A stretch of 63,858 bases of DNA, filler included, from Octopus bimaculoides (GCF_001194135.2; 6 parts of 6 records of this genome joined end to end with filler, not necessarily neighbours in it); one strand, 5' to 3'; shown: positions 35,057 through 46,021, counted from the whole stretch's first letter. The notes: generated by a model from the letters alone, not told the origin. Made by a program: numbers and translations.

Positions 35057-35923
35057 CTATGTAAGTACACACCGCGTTAAAAGCGTAGGACGAATCGAAT
35101 ATTTGAACATGGCGTCAAAATATAAGCAAAGAAACAATCGGTAACACTAACAATATTGATGTATGGCGAGCATGAAATTAACTTTTCCCCTTGTATCTTC
35201 GTTGGATGTCTGGATTGTAGAGTTCTACACGAAAGGAAGGCAGCACGTGTACCATGTGTTTATCATCGCAACATTTGCATGTCATCTTCGAATCGTTTTT
35301 ATTTTCCTCTGAAGATATAAGTAGCAATAGCGAGGGGATTACTTCCGTTATAAATTTTTTGCGCGCTGTCAATAGATATATTCATATATATATATAAGTG
35401 TATATATNNNNNNNNNNNNNNNNNNNNNNNNNNNNNNNNNNNNNNNNNNNNTTAATTAATTAANNNNNNNNNNNNNNNNNNNNNNNNNNNNNNNNNNNNN
35501 NNNNNNNGTCCATCACTGGAACTGTAAAAATCTGTAAAACTATCCAGAAGTTTATCATTTAAATATATATGAGCATGTTTAGATATGGAAGTATATGCAT
35601 GAGAATACATACATAAAACAAAACACAAATCTGCACGTATACATATACACACACACATACATGCCTACATACATACATACATACATACATACATACATGC
35701 ATGCATACATACATACCTACATACATACATACATACATGCATGCATACATACATACATACATACATACATACATACATGCATACATACATACATACAAAG
35801 GTACCCTGTTGTTGATTTTGAAATTCCCTGAAGGAACCTTGTATCTAAGTTAGAAACCGATTCCTTCTGTATTGGCAAGAAATCTTGAAATAAACTGAAT
35901 AATGATATACATACATACATACA

Positions 35924-35957
<34 letters not shown>

Positions 35958-35969
35958 CATACATACATC

Positions 35970-36480
35970 TGATGCAGTACCAGGCAGTGGATCTCGTGGA
36001 TTCTGGTCTTAACTGATTGGAAGTGTTATCATGTACGCTGTTTTGTCTTGGTATAAAAGATGGGCTACTGCAAATATTGTGCTGAATACCACAGATTTGC
36101 TTGTCACTCGTTTGACATTAACCAGTTGAGCGTGTCCCTTAGTGGCTGACGATATATGCATCTCTGATCACGAGGAGAAGTGGGGTAACATCATATCCAC
36201 GTGTTGAAAGGTATTCTTTGGGATTTGGATAATTGACCTTTGGAAACATGGTGTTTCGTTCAACATCCTTAAACAACCCGTATTCAGGGACCTTTTGAGC
36301 GGGATGGGCTACTCAATTCCATGGGCTGTTTATCTTGATATGAGATCACCATGTCGCGCACATATGTTTGTGATGCATGTGCCTGGTGTACTCTTATCAG
36401 ACGGGTACTTATGATGGGTATACTGGTCTTTGTATATTTTACTCCAGTGTCACTTAGATGGCATGCACTGCTCTCTCCTA
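35970..36480 (+). mobile_element. Unclassified interspersed repeat family F
   Basis: Reverse-complement homolog of 38820-39310 (e.g. cagtgtcacttagatggcatgcactgctctc vs gagagcagtgaatgtcatcaaagtgacactg). Confidence 0.75.
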
Positions 36481-37842
36481 CATACACGCATACTTATAGC
36501 AAATGAGTTCTAGATTATTATACTTAAACTGTTGGTGATTTCATCTTCAACTTATGTCAGGAAGCTAGATTTTCTTAATAGTACATACAATCACTATCAT
36601 TTGCAGAAAATTCACCCACTGGTGGGTTTCTGCGATGTTATTTAAAATTTATTTGGTCTTCTTTTCGAATATATGGATTTGCATTGTCCAATGTGATGTT
36701 TCTTAAGTAAATTTACCTTCTATTTTTGATAGAGCCAATTAGAATCGCTTAATGGCTTTTATAAATGTGTGTGAGTTATTTAGAGAATGTCTGGCATGTA
36801 TTACTTGTATATCATTGTTTGCTTGTGTGTACCTATTTATTATCTTGTCGTTTTGTATTTATATATAACACTACGGTCACCCAATGCGCCATTTCCCAGC
36901 TCCAGACTTTAGGGAAATGTCGTGAATGCTTTAGAGAAATGTCGTTCGAATTCTTTTCAGTCTCTCGCTTTCTCTCTCTCTCTCTCTCTCTCTTCCCCCC
37001 CTCTCTCTCTCTCTCTTCCCCCACTCCCTCTTCCCCTCCCTCTCTCTCTCCTTCTTTCTCTTCCCACCCTTCTTTCTCGAAGAAATCGACCGTATTCAAT
37101 TGAGGATAGAACTGGACTCCGCCATGTTTAAGAATACTAAGACCCGCTGTATATTCTGGCACCAAATTTACAGCCCCATCAAGAATTATATTGAATGCTG
37201 TCGCAAGCATCAAAGTATTGTGAATCGTTCAAAACATATTAATGGCCCTTCGCTGATTCGAAATATCCATTATTTTAAAGAAAAGGGAAACGCGACAAGA
37301 AGTATTGATGTCGTTCATGCCTTTCCATAAGACTGTTGGGTCGTAGGTGAATTGTAACAATTTCAACTCAAGATTGAAACTGCGTTGAGATCATGTTTTC
37401 CTTTACAAGAAACTTATACGACCACGACGTGTAGCGACAGGAAACGAAGTGGCTCTATATTTAGATAATTGGAATAAAATTACATATAATTGGAATGAAA
37501 TTATATATAATTGAAAACATAATATTTTAAGGTCTTTCCTTTTAAACACTGCTTCATATCCAAATGTTGATATTTTCATAAGCACAAAGCAACAGGATTA
37601 ATTCTCATGCATAAATTAATACTTTTCTTCAGCTTCAATGTATAAGTGTAAAGCTCTGGATTAAAATAAACAAATTAAACCAACTAAAAATACTACTATT
37701 TAATGAGCCTGTCTCTACACGATCACAAAACTAGCTTTTAATAAATCCCCCTCGAATCACGCTTCATCATCTAAAAAAAAATACCGAACAATGCATTAAG
37801 AATAATTTAGGTATGGTTACTCTGTGTATAAAAATAAACATG

Positions 37843-37910
<68 letters not shown>

Positions 37911-38544
37911 NNNNNNNNNNNNNNNNNNNNNNNNNNNNNNNNNNNNNNNNNNNNNNNNNNNNNNNNNNNNNNNNNNNNNNNNNNNNNNNNNNNNNNNNNN
38001 NNNNNNNNNNNNNNNNNNNNNNNNNNNNNNNNNNNNNNNNNNNNNNNNNNNNNNNNNNNNNNNNNNNNNNNNNNNNNNNNNNNNNNNNNNNNNNNNNNNN
38101 NNNNNNNNNNNNNNNNNNNNNNNNNNNNNNNNNNNNNNNNNNNNNNNNNNNNNNNNNNNNNNNNNNNNNNNNNNNNNNNNNNNNNNNNNNNNNNNNNNNN
38201 NNNNNNNNNNNNNNNNNNNNNNNNNNNNNNNNNNNNNNNNNNNNNNNNNNNNNNNNNNNNNNNNNNNNNNNNNNNNNNNNNNNNNNNNNNNNNNNNNNNN
38301 NNNNNNNNNNNNNNNNNNNNNNNNNNNNNNNNNNNNNNNNNNNNNNNNNNNNNNNNNNNNNNNNNNNNNNNNNNNNNNNNNNNNNNNNNNNNNNNNNNNN
38401 NNNNNNNNNNNNNNNNNNNNNNNNNNNNNNNNNNNNNNNNNNNNNNNNNNNNNNNNNNNNNNNNNNNNNNNNNNNNNNNNNNNNNNNNNNNNNNNNNNNN
38501 NNNNNNNNNNNNNNNNNNNNNNNNNNNNNNNNNNNNNNNNNNNN

Positions 38545-38760
38545 TGAGGAGGCATGATTTTTGTCTGAAGTCTTTCAGTATGATGTCTGGCCTATTTGCG
38601 TCTATCTTTCTGTCAGTTTGAATGGTGAAGTTCCAGAGGATTGCAATGTGATCATTTTCAAGTACTGGGGGTGGTTTGTGTTCCCACCAGTTTTTATCAT
38701 GGGGCAAGTCCAGGTTTTTGCATATTACCCAGTGAATATATTGTGCAGCTCTATCATGCC
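38545..38760 (-). pseudogene. Dong/R4-clade non-LTR retrotransposon, restriction-like endonuclease fragment
   Basis: RHDRAAQYIHWVICKNLDLPHDKNWWEHKPPPVLENDHIAILWNFTIQTDRKIDANRPDIILKDFRQKSCLL. Confidence 0.85.
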
Positions 38761-38819
38761 TGTTATTATTATTATTATTACTATTGTTGTTGTTGTTGTT
38801 GTTGCTGTTGTTGCTGTTG

Positions 38820-39310
38820 TGAGAGCAGTGAATGTCATCAAAGTGACACTGGGGTACAGATATACGAAGCCCAGTATACCCATCATGACCACACGTCTGA
38901 TAAGGGTATATCAGGCACATACACCCCAAGCTTATGTGCCTGACATAGTGATCACATATCATGATAAAGAGCATATGGCTCTGCAGGTAGGGCCCAGTAA
39001 GAATATTCTTCAGGTCGAGTAGCCCATTTCGCTCAAAAATTCCCTGAATAAGGGTTATTTGAGGATGATGAACGAAGCACCTATGTTTCGAGGGGTGAAT
39101 TATTCAGACCCTAAAGCATCCCTCTCAGCACAAGGTTATGAAGACTCTGCACTACTCCTGCTCGTGATCAGTGACGCACATATCCACCAAGGGACTAGTT
39201 AAGGTCAAACAACTGACAAGCAAATATGTGGTATTGAGCAGAATAAATACGTGTTGTAGTACATCTTTCACACCAAGACAAAAGATGTAACATACTACAG
39301 TCAAGATTAG
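38820..39310 (-). mobile_element. Repeat family F with (AAC/AAT)n tail (38761-38820)
   Basis: Homologous to 35970-36480. Confidence 0.75.
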
Positions 39311-40919: not shown

Positions 40920-41336
40920 NNNNNNNNNNNNNNNNNNNNNNNTATACATATCAGATTTTTAGGCATACATGTACATATATATACATATGTGTGCGTGTGT
41001 GTGTGTGTGTGTGTGTACATATAGTTATACATGTACTCTTAAACGTAGAGACGCTCGTATATGCAATTACATTCACGTACGCACACTGGATGATTTTGAG
41101 ATTAATTGGGTGATTGATTGGTAGATAAACTAATCGAATGATTGATATAAAGAGATTCCGATATATAAAGTAATTGATAGTTAATTTAATTGATAAAATG
41201 GTAAAATAAAAAAAGAAGATAAACGGGAATGGTTGACAAGATTGATAGACAGAACCGTCAATGTAGAGAAAGATATTAATGGAAATGGTAAAGCCTGGCA
41301 GACACACAAATTTTAAAATTAACTTGGTAGATTGCG

Positions 41337-41413
<77 letters not shown>

Positions 41414-41900
41414 AAATCACATCCAAGTTAAAAACAAAAAAAAAAAGAACAGTATAATCCTAGATGTATGGTAAGATAGGATGGTCACAGGTGGAATGGC
41501 TTTAATTATGGTTCTAGTCAACCAGGGCTGATCTGAGGCTAAACTATAACAATCTACTGCATCTACCGTCTGATTACTTGTATTTCTGTTCTGCATTCAC
41601 GCACGCAAGCACACACATGCATACTTATACAAACTTCTTTCACCTCATCTCTATCACACCTTCTTCGTCTCTAGGTTTATAAAGTTGCCACTTATGAAGT
41701 CATTATCAGTCATTTCAGGCCAACAAAATCACTGGTATGAACCGTTTCCTGCTGAGTCTCTCAAATTCTCAAATAACACCTCTCTGAACCAGTTCTATTC
41801 TCTTCAAGCAAGTCTTATGTAGATGTAACTCTATCGAATCTACAGAAGAGACAGTGTAACATAAATGGCAAACTTTTTCTGTTACCTTTTAATCGCTTTC

Positions 41901-41941
<41 letters not shown>

Positions 41942-41976
41942 GGCAGGCAGGCAGGCAGGCAGACAGACACACTGAC

Positions 41977-42018
<42 letters not shown>

Positions 42019-42308
42019 GCTGACAGGTGGACACATAAATAGCTTCGTAGAAAGATGTTTCCGGTGAGTCTCTGTACCGAAACAAGTTTTATGGTTAGAA
42101 AAACAGATGCTTAAAGAATTTCATCCAATTAATCAATCAGAAAGATGCAACCTGACCACAGAATCAATATACTTCTTTGTCTAGATGGAAATATTTCGCT
42201 CTACATTTATTAAAGTAAAAGTACCATATTTGTATTGCACGGTCCCAATGCTATCATTTTTTTCTCTTTTGAATGCGACGTTCAAGTAAGACGACAATTA
42301 AACACTTG

Positions 42309-42823
42309 ACGCCAACTTAATGTGACAGTCCCCTGAAGGGCATAATACTACTGTTGGTTAGACCTAGGAAGCTGCGCTGCTTCCTGTCGGCCTTGACACA
42401 TTTCCTATGTCCTTATGTTTACAAAGAGGAGACAAGCACCGCCACCCAGCTAAGACTGCATCCAGAGACTTGTTTCTGAGTCTTTGCTCGTCATCAGTCT
42501 GGAGTAGCATGACCTGCTAGTCAAAGATGCCTGACAAGATCTTGTAAACATATAATAATTCTAGTGAAATACATTCACTGATTTCAAATTTAGAAATGTT
42601 ACATTTCTAAATCTCTTCAGAGAGATTTATGCAGTAGTGATACGATGAAGTAGTTGTATGCTGTCAACTTAATGTGACAGTCCCATGAAGGGAATAATAC
42701 TACTGTTGGTTAGACCTAGGAAGCTGCACTGCTTCCTGTCGGCCTTGACACATCTCCTGTGTCCTTCAACGTATCACTACTGCATAAATCTCTCTGAGAG
42801 ATTTAGAAATGTATTATTTCTAA
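42309..42823 (-). mobile_element. PLE pseudo-LTR / retrozyme-like element with hammerhead, 13-bp TSD
   Basis: TSD aattaaacacttg (42296-42308, 42824-42836); 102-bp direct repeat (42313-42414, 42665-42766); 43/44-bp inverted repeat (42601-42644, 42770-42812). Confidence 0.7.
42461..42503 (-). ncRNA. Minimal type I hammerhead ribozyme motif
   Basis: Minus strand uccaga-CUGAUGA-c-gag-caaaga-cuc-a-GAAAC-aa-GUC-ucugga; stem I 6 bp perfect, stem II 3 bp. Confidence 0.7.
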
Positions 42824-42909
42824 AATTAAACACTTGTTCCGATACGCAATAATTATCCAGATGGATTTGAGGCAGTTTTGGATGTTCTTTTTGTTATTGA
42901 TGAAGTCAT

Positions 42910-43200
42910 AACTGGCACACCGTCGGTTACGACGTGTCGGATTCTGGTTGATCCGATCAACAGAAGATTGATCGTGGAGTTAACGTGTAATTGGCTGAAC
43001 ACTCCACAGACACACGTAAACTTAACGCAGTTCTCAGTAAGATCCAACGTGACACAGAATATGAGAAAGCTGACTCTGAACTACAGGTACAACTCATTTG
43101 GCCAGCTGAGTGGACTGGAGAAGCGTGAAATAAAGTGTCTTGCTTAAGGAATCGAACTCGTGACCAGTTACACTAACCACTAAGCTACGTTCCTTCACGC
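42910..43200 (-). mobile_element. Diverged SINE C 3' part adjoining a SINE E head
   Basis: ggcacaccgtcggttacgacg..gatccgatcaac; agctgagtggactggagaagcgtgaaataaagtgtcttgct..ggaatcgaactc. Confidence 0.7.
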
Positions 43201-43598: not shown

Positions 43599-43794
43599 GA
43601 CTTTTTCAGTCATTAGACTGCGGTCATGCTGGAGCACCGCACTGTGGGATTAAAACTGGAAACATGTGATTCAGAAGCAAACCTCTTACAATACTGCCAC
43701 GACCACGTCTAAAAATGATGAACAATCTTCATCGATTTTCGCACAGTGTATGGGATCTCATCAGAGGTGTTTACACTATTTCACCATATGTGCG

Positions 43795-44646
43795 GTCTGA
43801 TCAATAAGTATACGGACTGTTGCCATAGTAACGAAGCTAAAGCACGCAGAGTAAACCCGCTCACTACAGATTTACCTTCAACTCTGCTGTTGTGTATGCG
43901 CACTAAGTTTTAACGTTCTAGCTCACTTCCGCTGTTTACAGCAGTGCATGGAAGGAACGTGTGCAGCGTGTGATCGTCGCATTGACCATGACAGAGAAAG
44001 TTTAACGGAGAATCTGCATCAAATTTTGAGAAAAGCTTGGCGATATCTGCTCAGAGGCCTATGTAAATTTTCAAAAAGTTTTCATCGTTCTCGACACAAC
44101 CAAAGAAATTTTGTGAAACTGAAACCCGAATCTCTGTTTGGTCAGCTGGAAGCAGTTTTGGTACAAACTTGGCAGACACGCGTCTCATCCCCAAATCTTC
44201 AGTGATAATAGACTGAACTGAGCCGTAACTAATTTGCAGATCAGCCGACACCTCACAGATGGTGATTCGACCTTTTCCCCTCACAGTTGCGCGCACATCT
44301 AGGAGGTTTTCTCAGTTCTGCTGGTTGCGGGTCTCCCAGAACGTTCGTCAATATTGGCATTTTGTTGGCCATCTTGGAAACGTCTGAACCACTCGTACCC
44401 TTGTGTGCGGCTCATACACTCCTCTCCATACACTTTCTGCAAATTTGTATAGGCTTCTGAGCAGTTATTACCATGATAACTTTCTCTATCATGGTTAATG
44501 CGACGATCACATTACACACATTCCTTCCAGGCACTGGTGTAAACAATGGAAGTGATGTAGTTCAAAGTCAATCTGTGCCAAGCTTCTTCACTCTTTTGCT
44601 TCAGCTTCCTTACTATAACAACTATCCGGATACTTATTGATCAGAC
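43795..44646. mobile_element. Fold-back composite of two mariner 5' ends
   Basis: Termini gtctgatcaataagtat(a/c)cgga on both strands; + arm encodes MTEKV..ICIKF; - arm encodes ..MRRVSAKFVPKLL..DENFLK. Confidence 0.8.
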
Positions 44647-44864: not shown

Positions 44865-45092
44865 CAGTAGACCAGCTGGTCTGAGGGTCCTACCCTTCCT
44901 CAGTACTGCTACACGATTCTACTAGATATAGCAGTCGTTCGTCCTCCGTTCGCAATATGCAGCAGACAATGTACCAGTAGGGTAGGGTATGACGTTGAGG
45001 AAGGGTTAGGGCTAGGGTTAAGGTTAGGGTTAGGTTATCCCTAACCCTAACCCTAACCCTAACCATAACCCTTGAAACCAGCTGGTCTACTG
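44865..45092. mobile_element. MITE-like element with head-to-head telomeric repeats
   Basis: Perfect 16-bp IR cagtagaccagctggt (44865-44880) / accagctggtctactg (45077-45092); (TTAGGG)-like 45002-45036 then (CCCTAA)-like 45039-45072. Confidence 0.65.
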
Positions 45093-45327: not shown

Positions 45328-46021
45328 TACATTATTTATGAGTTAACTAGGATACTAAGGGTTTCAAGTAAAGACATCATCACAACTATTCCAGCGTTTC
45401 ACATGGAAGTGCTGGAGAACACGATCTCTTCCTATGAAATACATTGATTGTGTTTTTAACCCACAAATAATAAATATCTATCTACCGATACGGAGTTAAA
45501 AAAATCTTTCTCACTGTTCGATAATAGCTCTCACGGACGTACACACACACACATACACACGTATACACATATATACATTTATATTATGAATATAAGTATT
45601 ATATGTAGATATATACGTACTATGTGTGTATGCGTTTATGTATGTATGTATGTATGTATGTATGTATGTATGCACACACACACACACACACAACCACAAT
45701 GTTTATTGTACACTTTTCTTCCATTAATGAAACATCTGGAAGTTTTTCGACACGCCCAGTTATCGATGTAGGTTAAACATACAAGTAAATAAGTTATGTT
45801 CACACTAATGAATACAATCGAAATACGTTTACGTCAATCGTCTAATATATATACACATACATATATAAACAACATATATATACATATATACACACACACA
45901 CGTATATATATATATATATATNNNNNNNNNNNNNNNNNNNNNNNNNNNNNNNNNNNNNNNNNNNNTTAATTAATTAANNNNNNNNNNNNNNNNNNNNNNN
46001 NNNNNNNNNNNNNNNNNNNNN

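What the first reader, a model, noticed from the sequence alone, without database searches (positions are those of the whole stretch)
42296..42836. TSD-flanked 515-bp element with retrozyme / pseudo-LTR architecture around the hammerhead
Seen: 13-bp direct flanks aattaaacacttg; a 102-bp direct repeat with 5 mismatches at 352-bp spacing; a 43/44-bp near-perfect inverted repeat bracketing the second direct repeat; a perfect 12-bp palindrome arm pair (42588-42612); no ORF. Read on the minus strand, it is about 1.3 units of a 352-nt hammerhead-bearing monomer whose 5' end is an inverted copy of an internal segment. Established: PLE insertions often show partial tandem and inverted pLTRs, and non-LTR retrozymes are tandem monomers of a few hundred nt that give circular RNAs. 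Inference: a non-autonomous, PLE-mobilised ribozyme retroelement that could yield a ~352-nt circRNA. I know of no description of this family in octopus but cannot confirm novelty.
Basis: partly seen in the sequence, partly recalled or inferred. Interest (0 to 1): 0.85.

Follow-up and report, generated by a model that had tools for sequence, protein, structure and literature searches.

The report
Decayed hammerhead-bearing retroposon insertion
This is one old, dead insertion of a small non-coding retroelement that carries a hammerhead-ribozyme motif and has the partly tandem, partly inverted layout typical of Penelope-like element insertions: a known kind of element, and this copy cannot make a circular RNA by itself.

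Summary
That covers the 13-bp flanking duplication, the 102-nt direct repeat at 352-nt spacing (5 mismatches), the inverted copy of an internal segment (67/68 nt, 91%), the 12-bp-arm palindrome, and the absence of any ORF with a domain.

On the minus strand, 42503-42461 holds a type I hammerhead core (CUGAUGA...GAAA...GUC) with a 6-bp helix I. A permissive descriptor gives one hit here against 0.003 expected per shuffle. The motif is degenerate. Helix II is 3 bp closed by a C.A mismatch, the helix III loop (ACAAGU) is not palindromic, and no Rfam hammerhead model matches.

The layout is two head-to-head cDNA copies with their 3' ends facing outward. One is 1.3 units on the minus strand and the other is a 67-nt fragment on the plus strand. 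They meet at a 3-nt overlap, sit inside one target duplication, and have no poly(A). This matches the published insertion pattern of Penelope-like elements and their non-autonomous retrozyme derivatives.

The locus has only one hammerhead, so it cannot release a 352-nt circle. I could not test copy number, tandem arrays, a PLE partner or an empty site, because no cephalopod genome could be searched by DNA. Verdict: partly supported; probably a new member of a known kind; modest interest.

The parts
42296..42308 (.). Left copy of the 13-bp target-site duplication AATTAAACACTTG
   Evidence: 0 of 20,000 shuffles reach 13 nt
42309..42312 (-). 4 nt (acgc on the plus strand) between the duplication and the repeat unit; they do not align with the unit (1 of 4 match) and are probably untemplated bases at the 3' junction
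   Evidence: alignment
42313..42414 (-). Direct-repeat copy A. It is the 3'-terminal 102 nt of the minus-strand copy, that is, the overlap of the 1.3-unit copy
42415..42582 (-). Single-copy segment of the unit, which contains the hammerhead motif
42461..42503 (-). Type I hammerhead-like motif: UCCAGA / CUGAUGA / C-GAG-CAAAGA-CUC-A / GAAAC-AA-GUC | UCUGGA. The predicted cleavage site lies between 42467 and 42466
   Evidence: 1 hit against 0.003 expected; folds; no Rfam match
42583..42650 (-). Segment X, the internal segment that is copied in inverted orientation at the other end. It contains the palindrome 42588-42612
42651..42664 (-). 14-nt linker between X and the second direct-repeat copy
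42665..42766 (-). Direct-repeat copy A', the 5' end of the minus-strand copy, 95% identical to A
42764..42830 (+). Inverted copy of X, in sense on the plus strand. Its 3' end abuts and overlaps the right duplication by up to 7 nt of weak homology. Its 5' end overlaps A' by 3 nt (CTT)
42824..42836 (.). Right copy of the 13-bp target-site duplication

Best explanation
This is a single, old insertion of a small non-coding retroelement with a 352-nt unit that carries a type I hammerhead motif. It is a non-autonomous relative of Penelope-like elements (PLEs), in the class now called non-LTR retrozymes or their dispersed monomers.

Inferred mechanism:
1. An RNA longer than one unit served as template. 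It was either a transcript of a tandem array or a circular monomer copied round more than once.
2. A staggered break was made at AATTAAACACTTG.
3. The 3'-OH on the left primed a cDNA of 458 nt (42309 to 42766, the plus strand).
4. The 3'-OH on the right primed a second, short cDNA on segment X (42830 back to 42764). This was helped by microhomology between the target AATTAAA and the template AUUUGAAA.
5. The two cDNAs met head to head and joined at a 3-nt CTT overlap. Repair of the stagger produced the 13-bp duplication.

A snap-back of the first cDNA onto its own X segment would give the same product.

Shown: the repeats, their junctions, the duplication, the hammerhead core, and the absence of an ORF and of poly(A). 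Inferred: the RNA intermediate, the enzyme (PLE reverse transcriptase plus GIY-YIG nickase acting in trans) and the priming order.

The copy is now inert. It has one degenerate ribozyme and no partner ribozyme, and its internal duplicates have diverged by about 5.5%.
For: - The 13-bp duplication exactly bounds the repeat structure and is not chance.
- There is no poly(A) or simple-repeat tail at either end. There is no ORF over 55 aa and no Pfam domain.
- The minus-strand copy spans 1.3 units, and the inverted fragment is in sense on the plus strand. Both 3' ends therefore face the duplicated target, and the two 5' ends meet at 42764-42766. This is the arrangement described for PLE insertions: a partial tandem plus an adjacent inverted 5'-truncated copy (PMC8557442).
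- The hammerhead core, the GUC cleavage triplet and a 6-bp helix I are all present. The descriptor gives 1 hit against 0.003 expected per shuffled piece, and none in about 42 kb of other fetched eukaryotic DNA (L001 and L003).
- In metazoans such motifs are tied to PLEs and retrozymes (PMC4209133, PMC7229834, bioRxiv 10.64898/2026.07.22.740005).
- Unit length of 352 nt and GC of 41% fall within the published retrozyme ranges. Mussel units are 350-390 bp.
- The three duplications have statistically indistinguishable divergence: 5/102, 5/67 and 0/13, chi-square p = 0.52. That fits all three being created in one event.
- The piece shares old repeats with Octopus sinensis at 70-77% identity. Recently active PLE families are reported in O. 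vulgaris (PMC13282606).
Against: - No other copy of the unit could be found, so a family, its consensus and any link to an autonomous PLE are unproven.
- No Rfam hammerhead model matches.
- Helix II is only 3 bp with C.A at positions 10.1/11.1. The helix III loop is not palindromic, and the isolated motif folds no better than shuffles (z = +0.5).
- The ribozyme lies outside the duplicated 102 nt, whereas PLE hammerheads are described inside the pseudo-LTRs.
- The strong folding of the unit is not strand-specific: z = -5.0 on the minus strand and -4.4 on the plus strand.
- My descriptor was written after I had seen the motif, so its tolerance for helix II was fitted to this case.
- A LINE enzyme could produce the same layout by twin priming.
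Confidence: 0.6

Rival explanations
1. The same hammerhead-bearing RNA was retroposed by a LINE enzyme rather than a PLE. The inverted 5' fragment would then come from classical twin priming, and the element would behave as a SINE-like passenger of a LINE.
For: A 13-bp duplication and a 5' inversion with junction microhomology are hallmarks of LINE twin priming (my own knowledge of L1 biology). LINE-like fragments lie in the same piece. LINEs are the most abundant transposable-element order in O. vulgaris (PMC13282606).
Against: There is no poly(A) or microsatellite tail at either 3' end. Metazoan type I and minimal hammerheads are specifically associated with PLEs and retrozymes (PMC4209133; bioRxiv 2026.07.22.740005). 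Partial tandems are typical of PLE insertions rather than LINE insertions (PMC8557442).
Confidence: 0.15
2. This is a genuine member of an active-type non-LTR retrozyme family. Elsewhere in the genome the 352-nt unit would form tandem arrays with one hammerhead per unit, which are transcribed, self-cleaved and ligated into roughly 352-nt circular RNAs. This locus would be a dispersed 1.3-mer offspring made by rolling-circle reverse transcription of such a circle. This is a stronger version of the best explanation.
For: The unit size (352 nt), GC (41%), long duplication, lack of an ORF and type I hammerhead core match the published description (PMC7229834). Dispersed monomers are reported as common offspring (bioRxiv 2026.07.22.740005). 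The hypothetical circle is 64% paired, and the linear unit folds at z = -5. A copy longer than one unit is what rolling-circle copying of a circle would give.
Against: There is only one ribozyme at this locus. No tandem array or second copy was observed anywhere. The helix II and III defects predict poor cleavage. Structure is equally strong on the other strand. Minimal PLE-type hammerheads in pseudo-LTRs also occur as single dispersed motifs without any circle (PMC4209133).
Confidence: 0.2
3. The structure is not a retroposition product. It would be a foldback or MITE-like DNA transposon (X, 113 nt, inverted X; 42583-42830) nested in or next to a related repeat, or a local duplication-inversion rearrangement.
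For: X and its inverted copy form 67/68-nt terminal-inverted-repeat-like arms around a 113-nt core. Palindromes are abundant in the element, and folding is strand-symmetric.
Against: No target duplication flanks 42583-42830 itself. The 13-bp duplication instead bounds the whole 515-bp body and overlaps the end of the inverted arm. The core between the arms is a copy of the element's own 3' end in exact 352-nt register, which a foreign MITE would not carry. The three duplications are of equal age.
Confidence: 0.05

Closest known systems
Metazoan non-LTR retrozymes (Cervera & de la Pena 2020, PMC7229834), e.g. Mytilus galloprovincialis 350-390-bp units
   Same: It is a non-coding unit of a few hundred nt (352) with low GC (41%) and a type I hammerhead core with a GUC cleavage site. 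It has a target duplication much longer than 4 bp, more than one unit in tandem register, and a strongly self-paired predicted RNA.
   Different: It has only 1.3 units and a single ribozyme. Helix II is 3 bp with a C.A closing pair, and the helix III loop ACAAGU is not palindromic. The retrozyme ribozymes printed in that paper's supplement read ...GAAAC-GCGC-GUC (mussel)...GAAAC-AUGUC (axolotl Ax330) and ...GAAAC-AGUACU-GUC (coral). I compared only the ribozyme motifs by eye and ran no alignment of the 352-nt unit against those sequences. Circular RNA was not tested.
Penelope-like element insertions with pseudo-LTRs and minimal hammerheads (PMC4209133; PMC8557442)
   Same: It has a partial tandem, an inverted 5'-truncated copy abutting the 5' end, no poly(A) and a variable-length target duplication. 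Its hammerhead has a very short helix III and an unpaired base at the 5' side of helix II.
   Different: It has no RT/GIY-YIG ORF and is only 515 bp in total. Helix II is short (3 bp) rather than the 6-8 bp described for PLE minimal hammerheads. The ribozyme lies outside the duplicated part. No separate 30-40-bp 'tail' can be recognised. Sequence identity to a PLE pseudo-LTR was not testable.
LINE-1 5'-inverted insertions made by twin priming
   Same: Two convergent cDNA segments with their 3' ends outward are joined by microhomology inside one target duplication.
   Different: There is no poly(A). The inverted segment is not the sequence immediately upstream of the direct segment unless 168 nt are skipped on a multimeric template. 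The cargo is a ribozyme-bearing non-coding unit.
Schistosoma Sm-alpha / newt satellite 2 hammerhead repeats
   Same: These are roughly 330-nt repeats that carry type I hammerheads with a weak helix III and work as dimers.
   Different: Those are high-copy tandem or SINE-like families with proven cleavage. Here there is one decayed copy. The Pol III A and B boxes nearby (43187 and 43158, minus strand) lie outside the duplicated target, in a separate SINE-like sequence.

Membership tests
Hammerhead ribozyme, type I | Conserved core C3-U-G-A-N-G-A9, G12-A-A14, A15.1/U16.1 and a cleavable H17 | tested here: met
   CUGAUGA at 42497-42491, GAAA at 42476-42473 and GUC at 42469-42467 on the minus strand.
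Hammerhead ribozyme, type I | Helix I formed by the sequences flanking the motif (open-ended, type I topology) | tested here: met
   UCCAGA (42503-42498) pairs with UCUGGA (42466-42461), 6 bp.
Hammerhead ribozyme, type I | Helix II of 4 bp or more, closed by a 10.1-11.1 base pair | tested here: not met
   Only GAG/CUC pairs (3 bp). Positions 10.1/11.1 are C.A. One CpG-type change (CUCA from CUCG) would restore a fourth pair; that is inference only.
Hammerhead ribozyme, type I | Helix III hairpin, or a palindromic loop that lets two motifs form it in trans | tested here: not met
   ACAAGU is not palindromic. The self-duplex is +0.2 kcal/mol against -6.0 for ACAUGU. A 2-bp stem with a 2-nt loop cannot close.
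Hammerhead ribozyme, type I | Match to a curated covariance model (Rfam Hammerhead_1 and relatives) | tested here: not met
   No hammerhead family was reported at E<=1 on 10.4 kb or at E<=10 on 631 nt.
Hammerhead ribozyme, type I | Self-cleavage | not testable with these tools
   Needs in vitro transcription of monomer and dimer constructs.
Non-LTR retrozyme | Tandem repeats (dimer or longer) with one hammerhead per unit, so that two cleavages release a monomer | tested here: not met
   The locus has 1.3 units and one hammerhead. The positions one period away hold unrelated sequence. This applies to this locus only; arrays elsewhere in the genome were not testable.
Non-LTR retrozyme | Unit of 150-450 nt, GC below 45-50%, no ORF | tested here: met
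   352 nt, GC 0.41, longest ORF 55 aa without a Pfam match. LTRs, primer-binding site and polypurine tract were not searched for explicitly.
Non-LTR retrozyme | Target-site duplication longer than the 4 bp of plant LTR retrozymes | tested here: met
   13 bp.
Non-LTR retrozyme | Multi-copy family in the host genome | not testable with these tools
   No cephalopod genome can be searched by DNA. Protein-route tricks, metagenome, viral and prokaryote scans all came back empty.
Non-LTR retrozyme | Expression as monomeric circular RNA | not testable with these tools
   Needs RNA data.
Penelope-like element insertion (non-autonomous derivative) | Partial tandem that forms a pseudo-LTR | tested here: met
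   A and A', 102 nt at 352-nt spacing.
Penelope-like element insertion (non-autonomous derivative) | Inverted 5'-truncated copy adjacent to the 5' end | tested here: met
   42764-42830 is in sense on the plus strand, head to head with the minus-strand copy (PMC8557442).
Penelope-like element insertion (non-autonomous derivative) | Hammerhead located in the pseudo-LTR | tested here: inconclusive
   The hammerhead lies 47 nt outside the duplicated 102 nt. In a 1.3-mer the extent of the 'pseudo-LTR' is set arbitrarily by the truncation point.
Penelope-like element insertion (non-autonomous derivative) | RT plus GIY-YIG ORF (autonomous element) | tested here: not met
   No such ORF is in the element. 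ORFs of 70 aa or more elsewhere in the piece showed no obvious PLE reading frame by eye, but the piece was not scanned systematically against Pfam. Only a non-autonomous status is claimed.
Penelope-like element insertion (non-autonomous derivative) | Sequence homology of the unit to the terminus of an autonomous PLE in the same genome | not testable with these tools
   The only octopus DNA reached was 22 kb of O. sinensis (L003), which has no match to the element.

The most novel reading that the evidence does not exclude
The 352-nt unit is the first recognised cephalopod family of non-LTR retrozymes. This 1.3-unit head-to-head insertion would then be a fossil of rolling-circle reverse transcription of a circular ribozyme RNA, combined with priming from both ends of the staggered break. 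That would give sequence-level evidence for how PLE machinery copies circular templates.
Probability: 0.2. Interest if true: 0.45.

Novelty: new member of a known kind. Interest (0 to 1): 0.27.

Why it matters
If the unit proves to be a multi-copy family, retrozyme or PLE-derived ribozyme elements would extend to cephalopods. The held literature has no paper linking retrozymes to cephalopods, and cephalopod genomes are rich in recently active PLEs (PMC13282606).

The clean junctions of this copy are a small but readable record of the poorly understood PLE insertion mechanism. They show both 3' ends facing outward, a 3-nt join, 4 untemplated bases, and microhomology at the second priming site.

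By itself, a single decayed copy has no expected function and changes nothing about what is known of these elements.

Tried and rejected
1. Rfam scans of the whole piece (E<=1) and of 631 nt (E<=10) gave no hammerhead. The only hits were microsatellite or hairpin artefacts such as mir-297.

2. I tried to find other copies through spurious ORFs:
- The 48-aa minus-strand ORF found no homologue.
- The plus-frame stretch 42333-42479, searched against 1.84 billion representatives, gave two unrelated tandem-repeat 'proteins'.
- Exact look-ups of window ORFs 36833-37213(-) and 42685-42852(+) are not on record.

3. DNA pattern scans were all empty: metagenome contigs twice, viral contigs twice and prokaryote genomes once. 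These collections do not hold cephalopod genomes, so the result says nothing about copy number.

4. I tried sampling the host genome through transposon proteins:
- The LINE-like fragment reached only an unrelated ENA eukaryotic contig (L001/L002).
- The mariner fragment reached 22 kb of Octopus sinensis (L003).
- Neither holds the element or any hammerhead.

5. The paralogous empty-site test failed, because the flanks have no other copy in the piece.

6. I rejected folding strength as evidence for a functional RNA, because both strands fold equally well.

7. I rejected a Pol III-driven SINE reading for the unit. It has only a one-mismatch A-box-like word at chance level and no B box.

8. I rejected a MITE reading (see rival explanations).

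9. Supplementary PLE sequences for an octopus comparison are not held for PMC8557442 or PMC4209133.

Full report
**1. The observation**

- Flanking duplication: AATTAAACACTTG occurs at 42296-42308 and 42824-42836.
- Direct repeat: a 102-nt repeat (42313-42414 and 42665-42766) has 5 mismatches and 352-nt spacing.
- Inverted repeat: segment 42583-42650 recurs in inverted orientation at 42764-42830, 68 versus 67 nt, with 5 mismatches and one 1-nt indel.
- Palindrome: 42588-42612 has 12-nt perfect arms.
- ORFs: the longest ORF touching the element is 55 aa, and none of the three longest has a Pfam match.
- Chance: no shuffle out of 20,000 of the two 40-nt flanks shares a word as long as 13 nt.
- No part of the element recurs elsewhere in the 10.4-kb piece.

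**2. The hammerhead**

The minus strand at 42503-42461 reads UCCAGA-CUGAUGA-C-GAG-CAAAGA-CUC-A-GAAAC-AA-GUC|UCUGGA.
- All invariant core nucleotides, the GUC cleavage triplet and a 6-bp helix I are present.
- A permissive type I descriptor I wrote finds exactly this one site in the piece. It gives 0.003 hits per dinucleotide shuffle of the piece, none with helix I of 6 bp or more. It gives none in about 42 kb of other fetched eukaryotic DNA (L001 and L003). I wrote the descriptor after seeing the motif, so its tolerance for helix II is fitted to this case.

The motif is degenerate.
- Helix II is only 3 bp, closed by a C.A mismatch.
- The helix III region ACAAGU cannot form a hairpin, and it is not palindromic. 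The trans-helix used by dimeric metazoan hammerheads would be unstable here: +0.2 kcal/mol, against -6.0 for ACAUGU.
- The isolated motif folds no better than shuffles.
- No Rfam hammerhead model reports it, even at E<=10.

Proven retrozyme ribozymes printed in the supplement of PMC7229834 read ...GAAAC-AUGUC (axolotl Ax330)...GAAAC-GCGC-GUC (mussel) and ...GAAAC-AGUACU-GUC (coral). The present copy is one substitution away from the Ax330 form. One CpG-type change (CUCG to CUCA) would account for the lost fourth pair of helix II. Both points are inference from a single sequence.

PMC4209133 describes PLE hammerheads with a very short helix III, an unpaired base at the 5' side of helix II, activity only as dimers, and frequent occurrence as single dispersed motifs.

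**3. Anatomy**

Taking the minus strand as sense (the strand with the ribozyme), the body 42823-42309 reads in this order:
- an antisense copy of X (about 60-67 nt);
- A' (102 nt);
- a 14-nt linker;
- X (68 nt);
- a 168-nt unique segment with the ribozyme;
- A (102 nt);
- 4 unaligned bases.

The direct part is therefore 458 nt, or 1.3 periods of 352. 'A' is simply the overlap of that 1.3-mer, not a separate module.

The inverted fragment is in sense on the plus strand, with its 3' end at the right target copy. The long copy has its 3' end at the left target copy. The two are head to head with both 3' ends outward, and their 5' ends overlap by 3 nt (CTT, 42764-42766).

At the right end the homology to the unit fades across the first 7 nt of the duplication (template AUUUGAAA against target AATTAAA). 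This reads as priming microhomology. Neither end has poly(A) or a simple-repeat tail.

The three duplicated parts have statistically indistinguishable divergence: 5/102, 5/67 and 0/13, chi-square p = 0.52, pooled 5.5%. All three may date from one event.

**4. Mechanism**

The layout is what target-primed reverse transcription from both ends of a staggered break would produce on an RNA longer than one unit. Such an RNA could be a tandem-array transcript, or a circle copied for more than one turn. A snap-back of the first cDNA onto its own X segment gives the same product.

PMC8557442 describes this outcome for Penelope-like elements: a partial tandem forming a pseudo-LTR, plus an inverted 5'-truncated copy abutting the 5' end. 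It attributes the pattern to the still undefined action of the GIY-YIG nickase.

Metazoan type I and minimal hammerheads are tied to PLEs (PMC4209133) and to non-LTR retrozymes (PMC7229834). A 2026 preprint argues that retrozymes are non-autonomous PLE derivatives and that dispersed monomers are common (10.64898/2026.07.22.740005).

The unit length (352 nt), GC content (41%), lack of an ORF and long duplication fit that class. My best explanation (confidence 0.6) is a non-autonomous, PLE-type, hammerhead-bearing retroposon insertion that is now dead.

**5. What is not supported**

The locus holds a single hammerhead. One period upstream lies the inverted fragment and flank, and one period downstream lies outside the element. 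Two cleavages 352 nt apart cannot happen here, so this locus cannot release a circle. A lone minimal hammerhead also has no dimer partner in cis.

The strong predicted folding of the unit (z = -5.0) is matched by the opposite strand (z = -4.4). It reflects DNA palindromes, not a strand-specific RNA.

Whether a family, tandem arrays, a PLE partner, an empty site or circular RNAs exist could not be tested.

**6. Search for relatives**

No tool here searches cephalopod genomes by DNA.
- ORF-based tricks found nothing relevant.
- Metagenome, viral and prokaryotic pattern scans found nothing.
- A mariner pseudogene in the piece led to one Octopus sinensis locus (CM016879.1, L003). That locus shares old repeats with the piece at 70-77% identity, consistent with an octopod-like host. 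It has no copy of the element.
- The held literature contains no paper linking retrozymes to cephalopods. PMC13282606 reports 31 recently active PLE families in O. vulgaris.

**7. Rivals**

- LINE-mediated twin priming of the same RNA (0.15). The missing tail and the association of hammerheads with PLEs argue against it.
- A true circle-forming retrozyme family of which this is an offspring (0.2). This is a stronger form of the main reading and is untested.
- A MITE, foldback element or local rearrangement (0.05). Against it: the duplication bounds the whole body and overlaps the inverted arm, the core between the arms is in exact unit register, and the duplicates are of equal age.

**8. Verdict**

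The object is an ordinary, decayed member of a known kind of element, PLE-derived hammerhead retroposons or retrozyme monomers. It possibly belongs to a family not yet described in cephalopods. Interest is modest. The readable junctions are the most useful aspect.

Noticed in passing
window 45002-45072: Head-to-head telomere-type repeats, about 5.5 x AGGGTT followed directly by about 5.7 x CCCTAA, form a long hairpin. This accounts for the sub-threshold Rfam miRNA hits there (mir-4788, mir-331, mir-266). No hammerhead lies next to it.
   Followed up: partly
window 43158-43197, minus strand (repeat probably extends down towards about 42840): A perfect Pol III A box (TAGCTTAGTGG at 43187) and a one-mismatch B box (AGTTCGATTCC at 43158) suggest a tRNA-derived SINE head. 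On the minus strand it lies directly 5' of the hammerhead element. ARAGORN and Rfam find no tRNA, and no second copy is in the piece.
   Followed up: partly
window about 43794-44555, minus strand: A frameshifted mariner/Mos1-type transposase pseudogene (HTH_48, E = 5e-6). Its DNA is 77% identical to a locus on Octopus sinensis CM016879.1 (L003), which NCBI annotates as 'protein GVQW3'.
   Followed up: yes
window 36029-36447 (+) and 38849-39289 (-): Two oppositely oriented copies of an unclassified repeat, 68-70% identical to L003 8071-8534 of Octopus sinensis.
   Followed up: no
window 38561-38780 (-), next to gap 37911-38544; second gap 40920-40942: A LINE-like C-terminal protein fragment (...ILWNFTIQTDRKIDANRPDIILKD...) is cut by a 634-N assembly gap. 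Its only database relative (53% identity) is on an ENA eukaryotic contig. It has no Pfam match.
   Followed up: partly
window 41900-42026: A compound microsatellite, (CAGA)n-(CAGG)n-(TAGA)n, lies 270 bp from the element. PLEs are reported to favour microsatellite targets, but the insertion is not inside this one.
   Followed up: no
window 42309-42823 versus surroundings: CpG observed/expected is 0.37 in the element against 0.68-0.74 in the flanks and the whole piece. Counts are small (8 CpG).
   Followed up: no
window 35645-35968, 40979-41041, 45539-45697: Rfam 'mir-297', 'mir-3149' and 'mir-466' hits (all below gathering score) fall on ATAC/TG microsatellites and are artefacts.
   Followed up: yes
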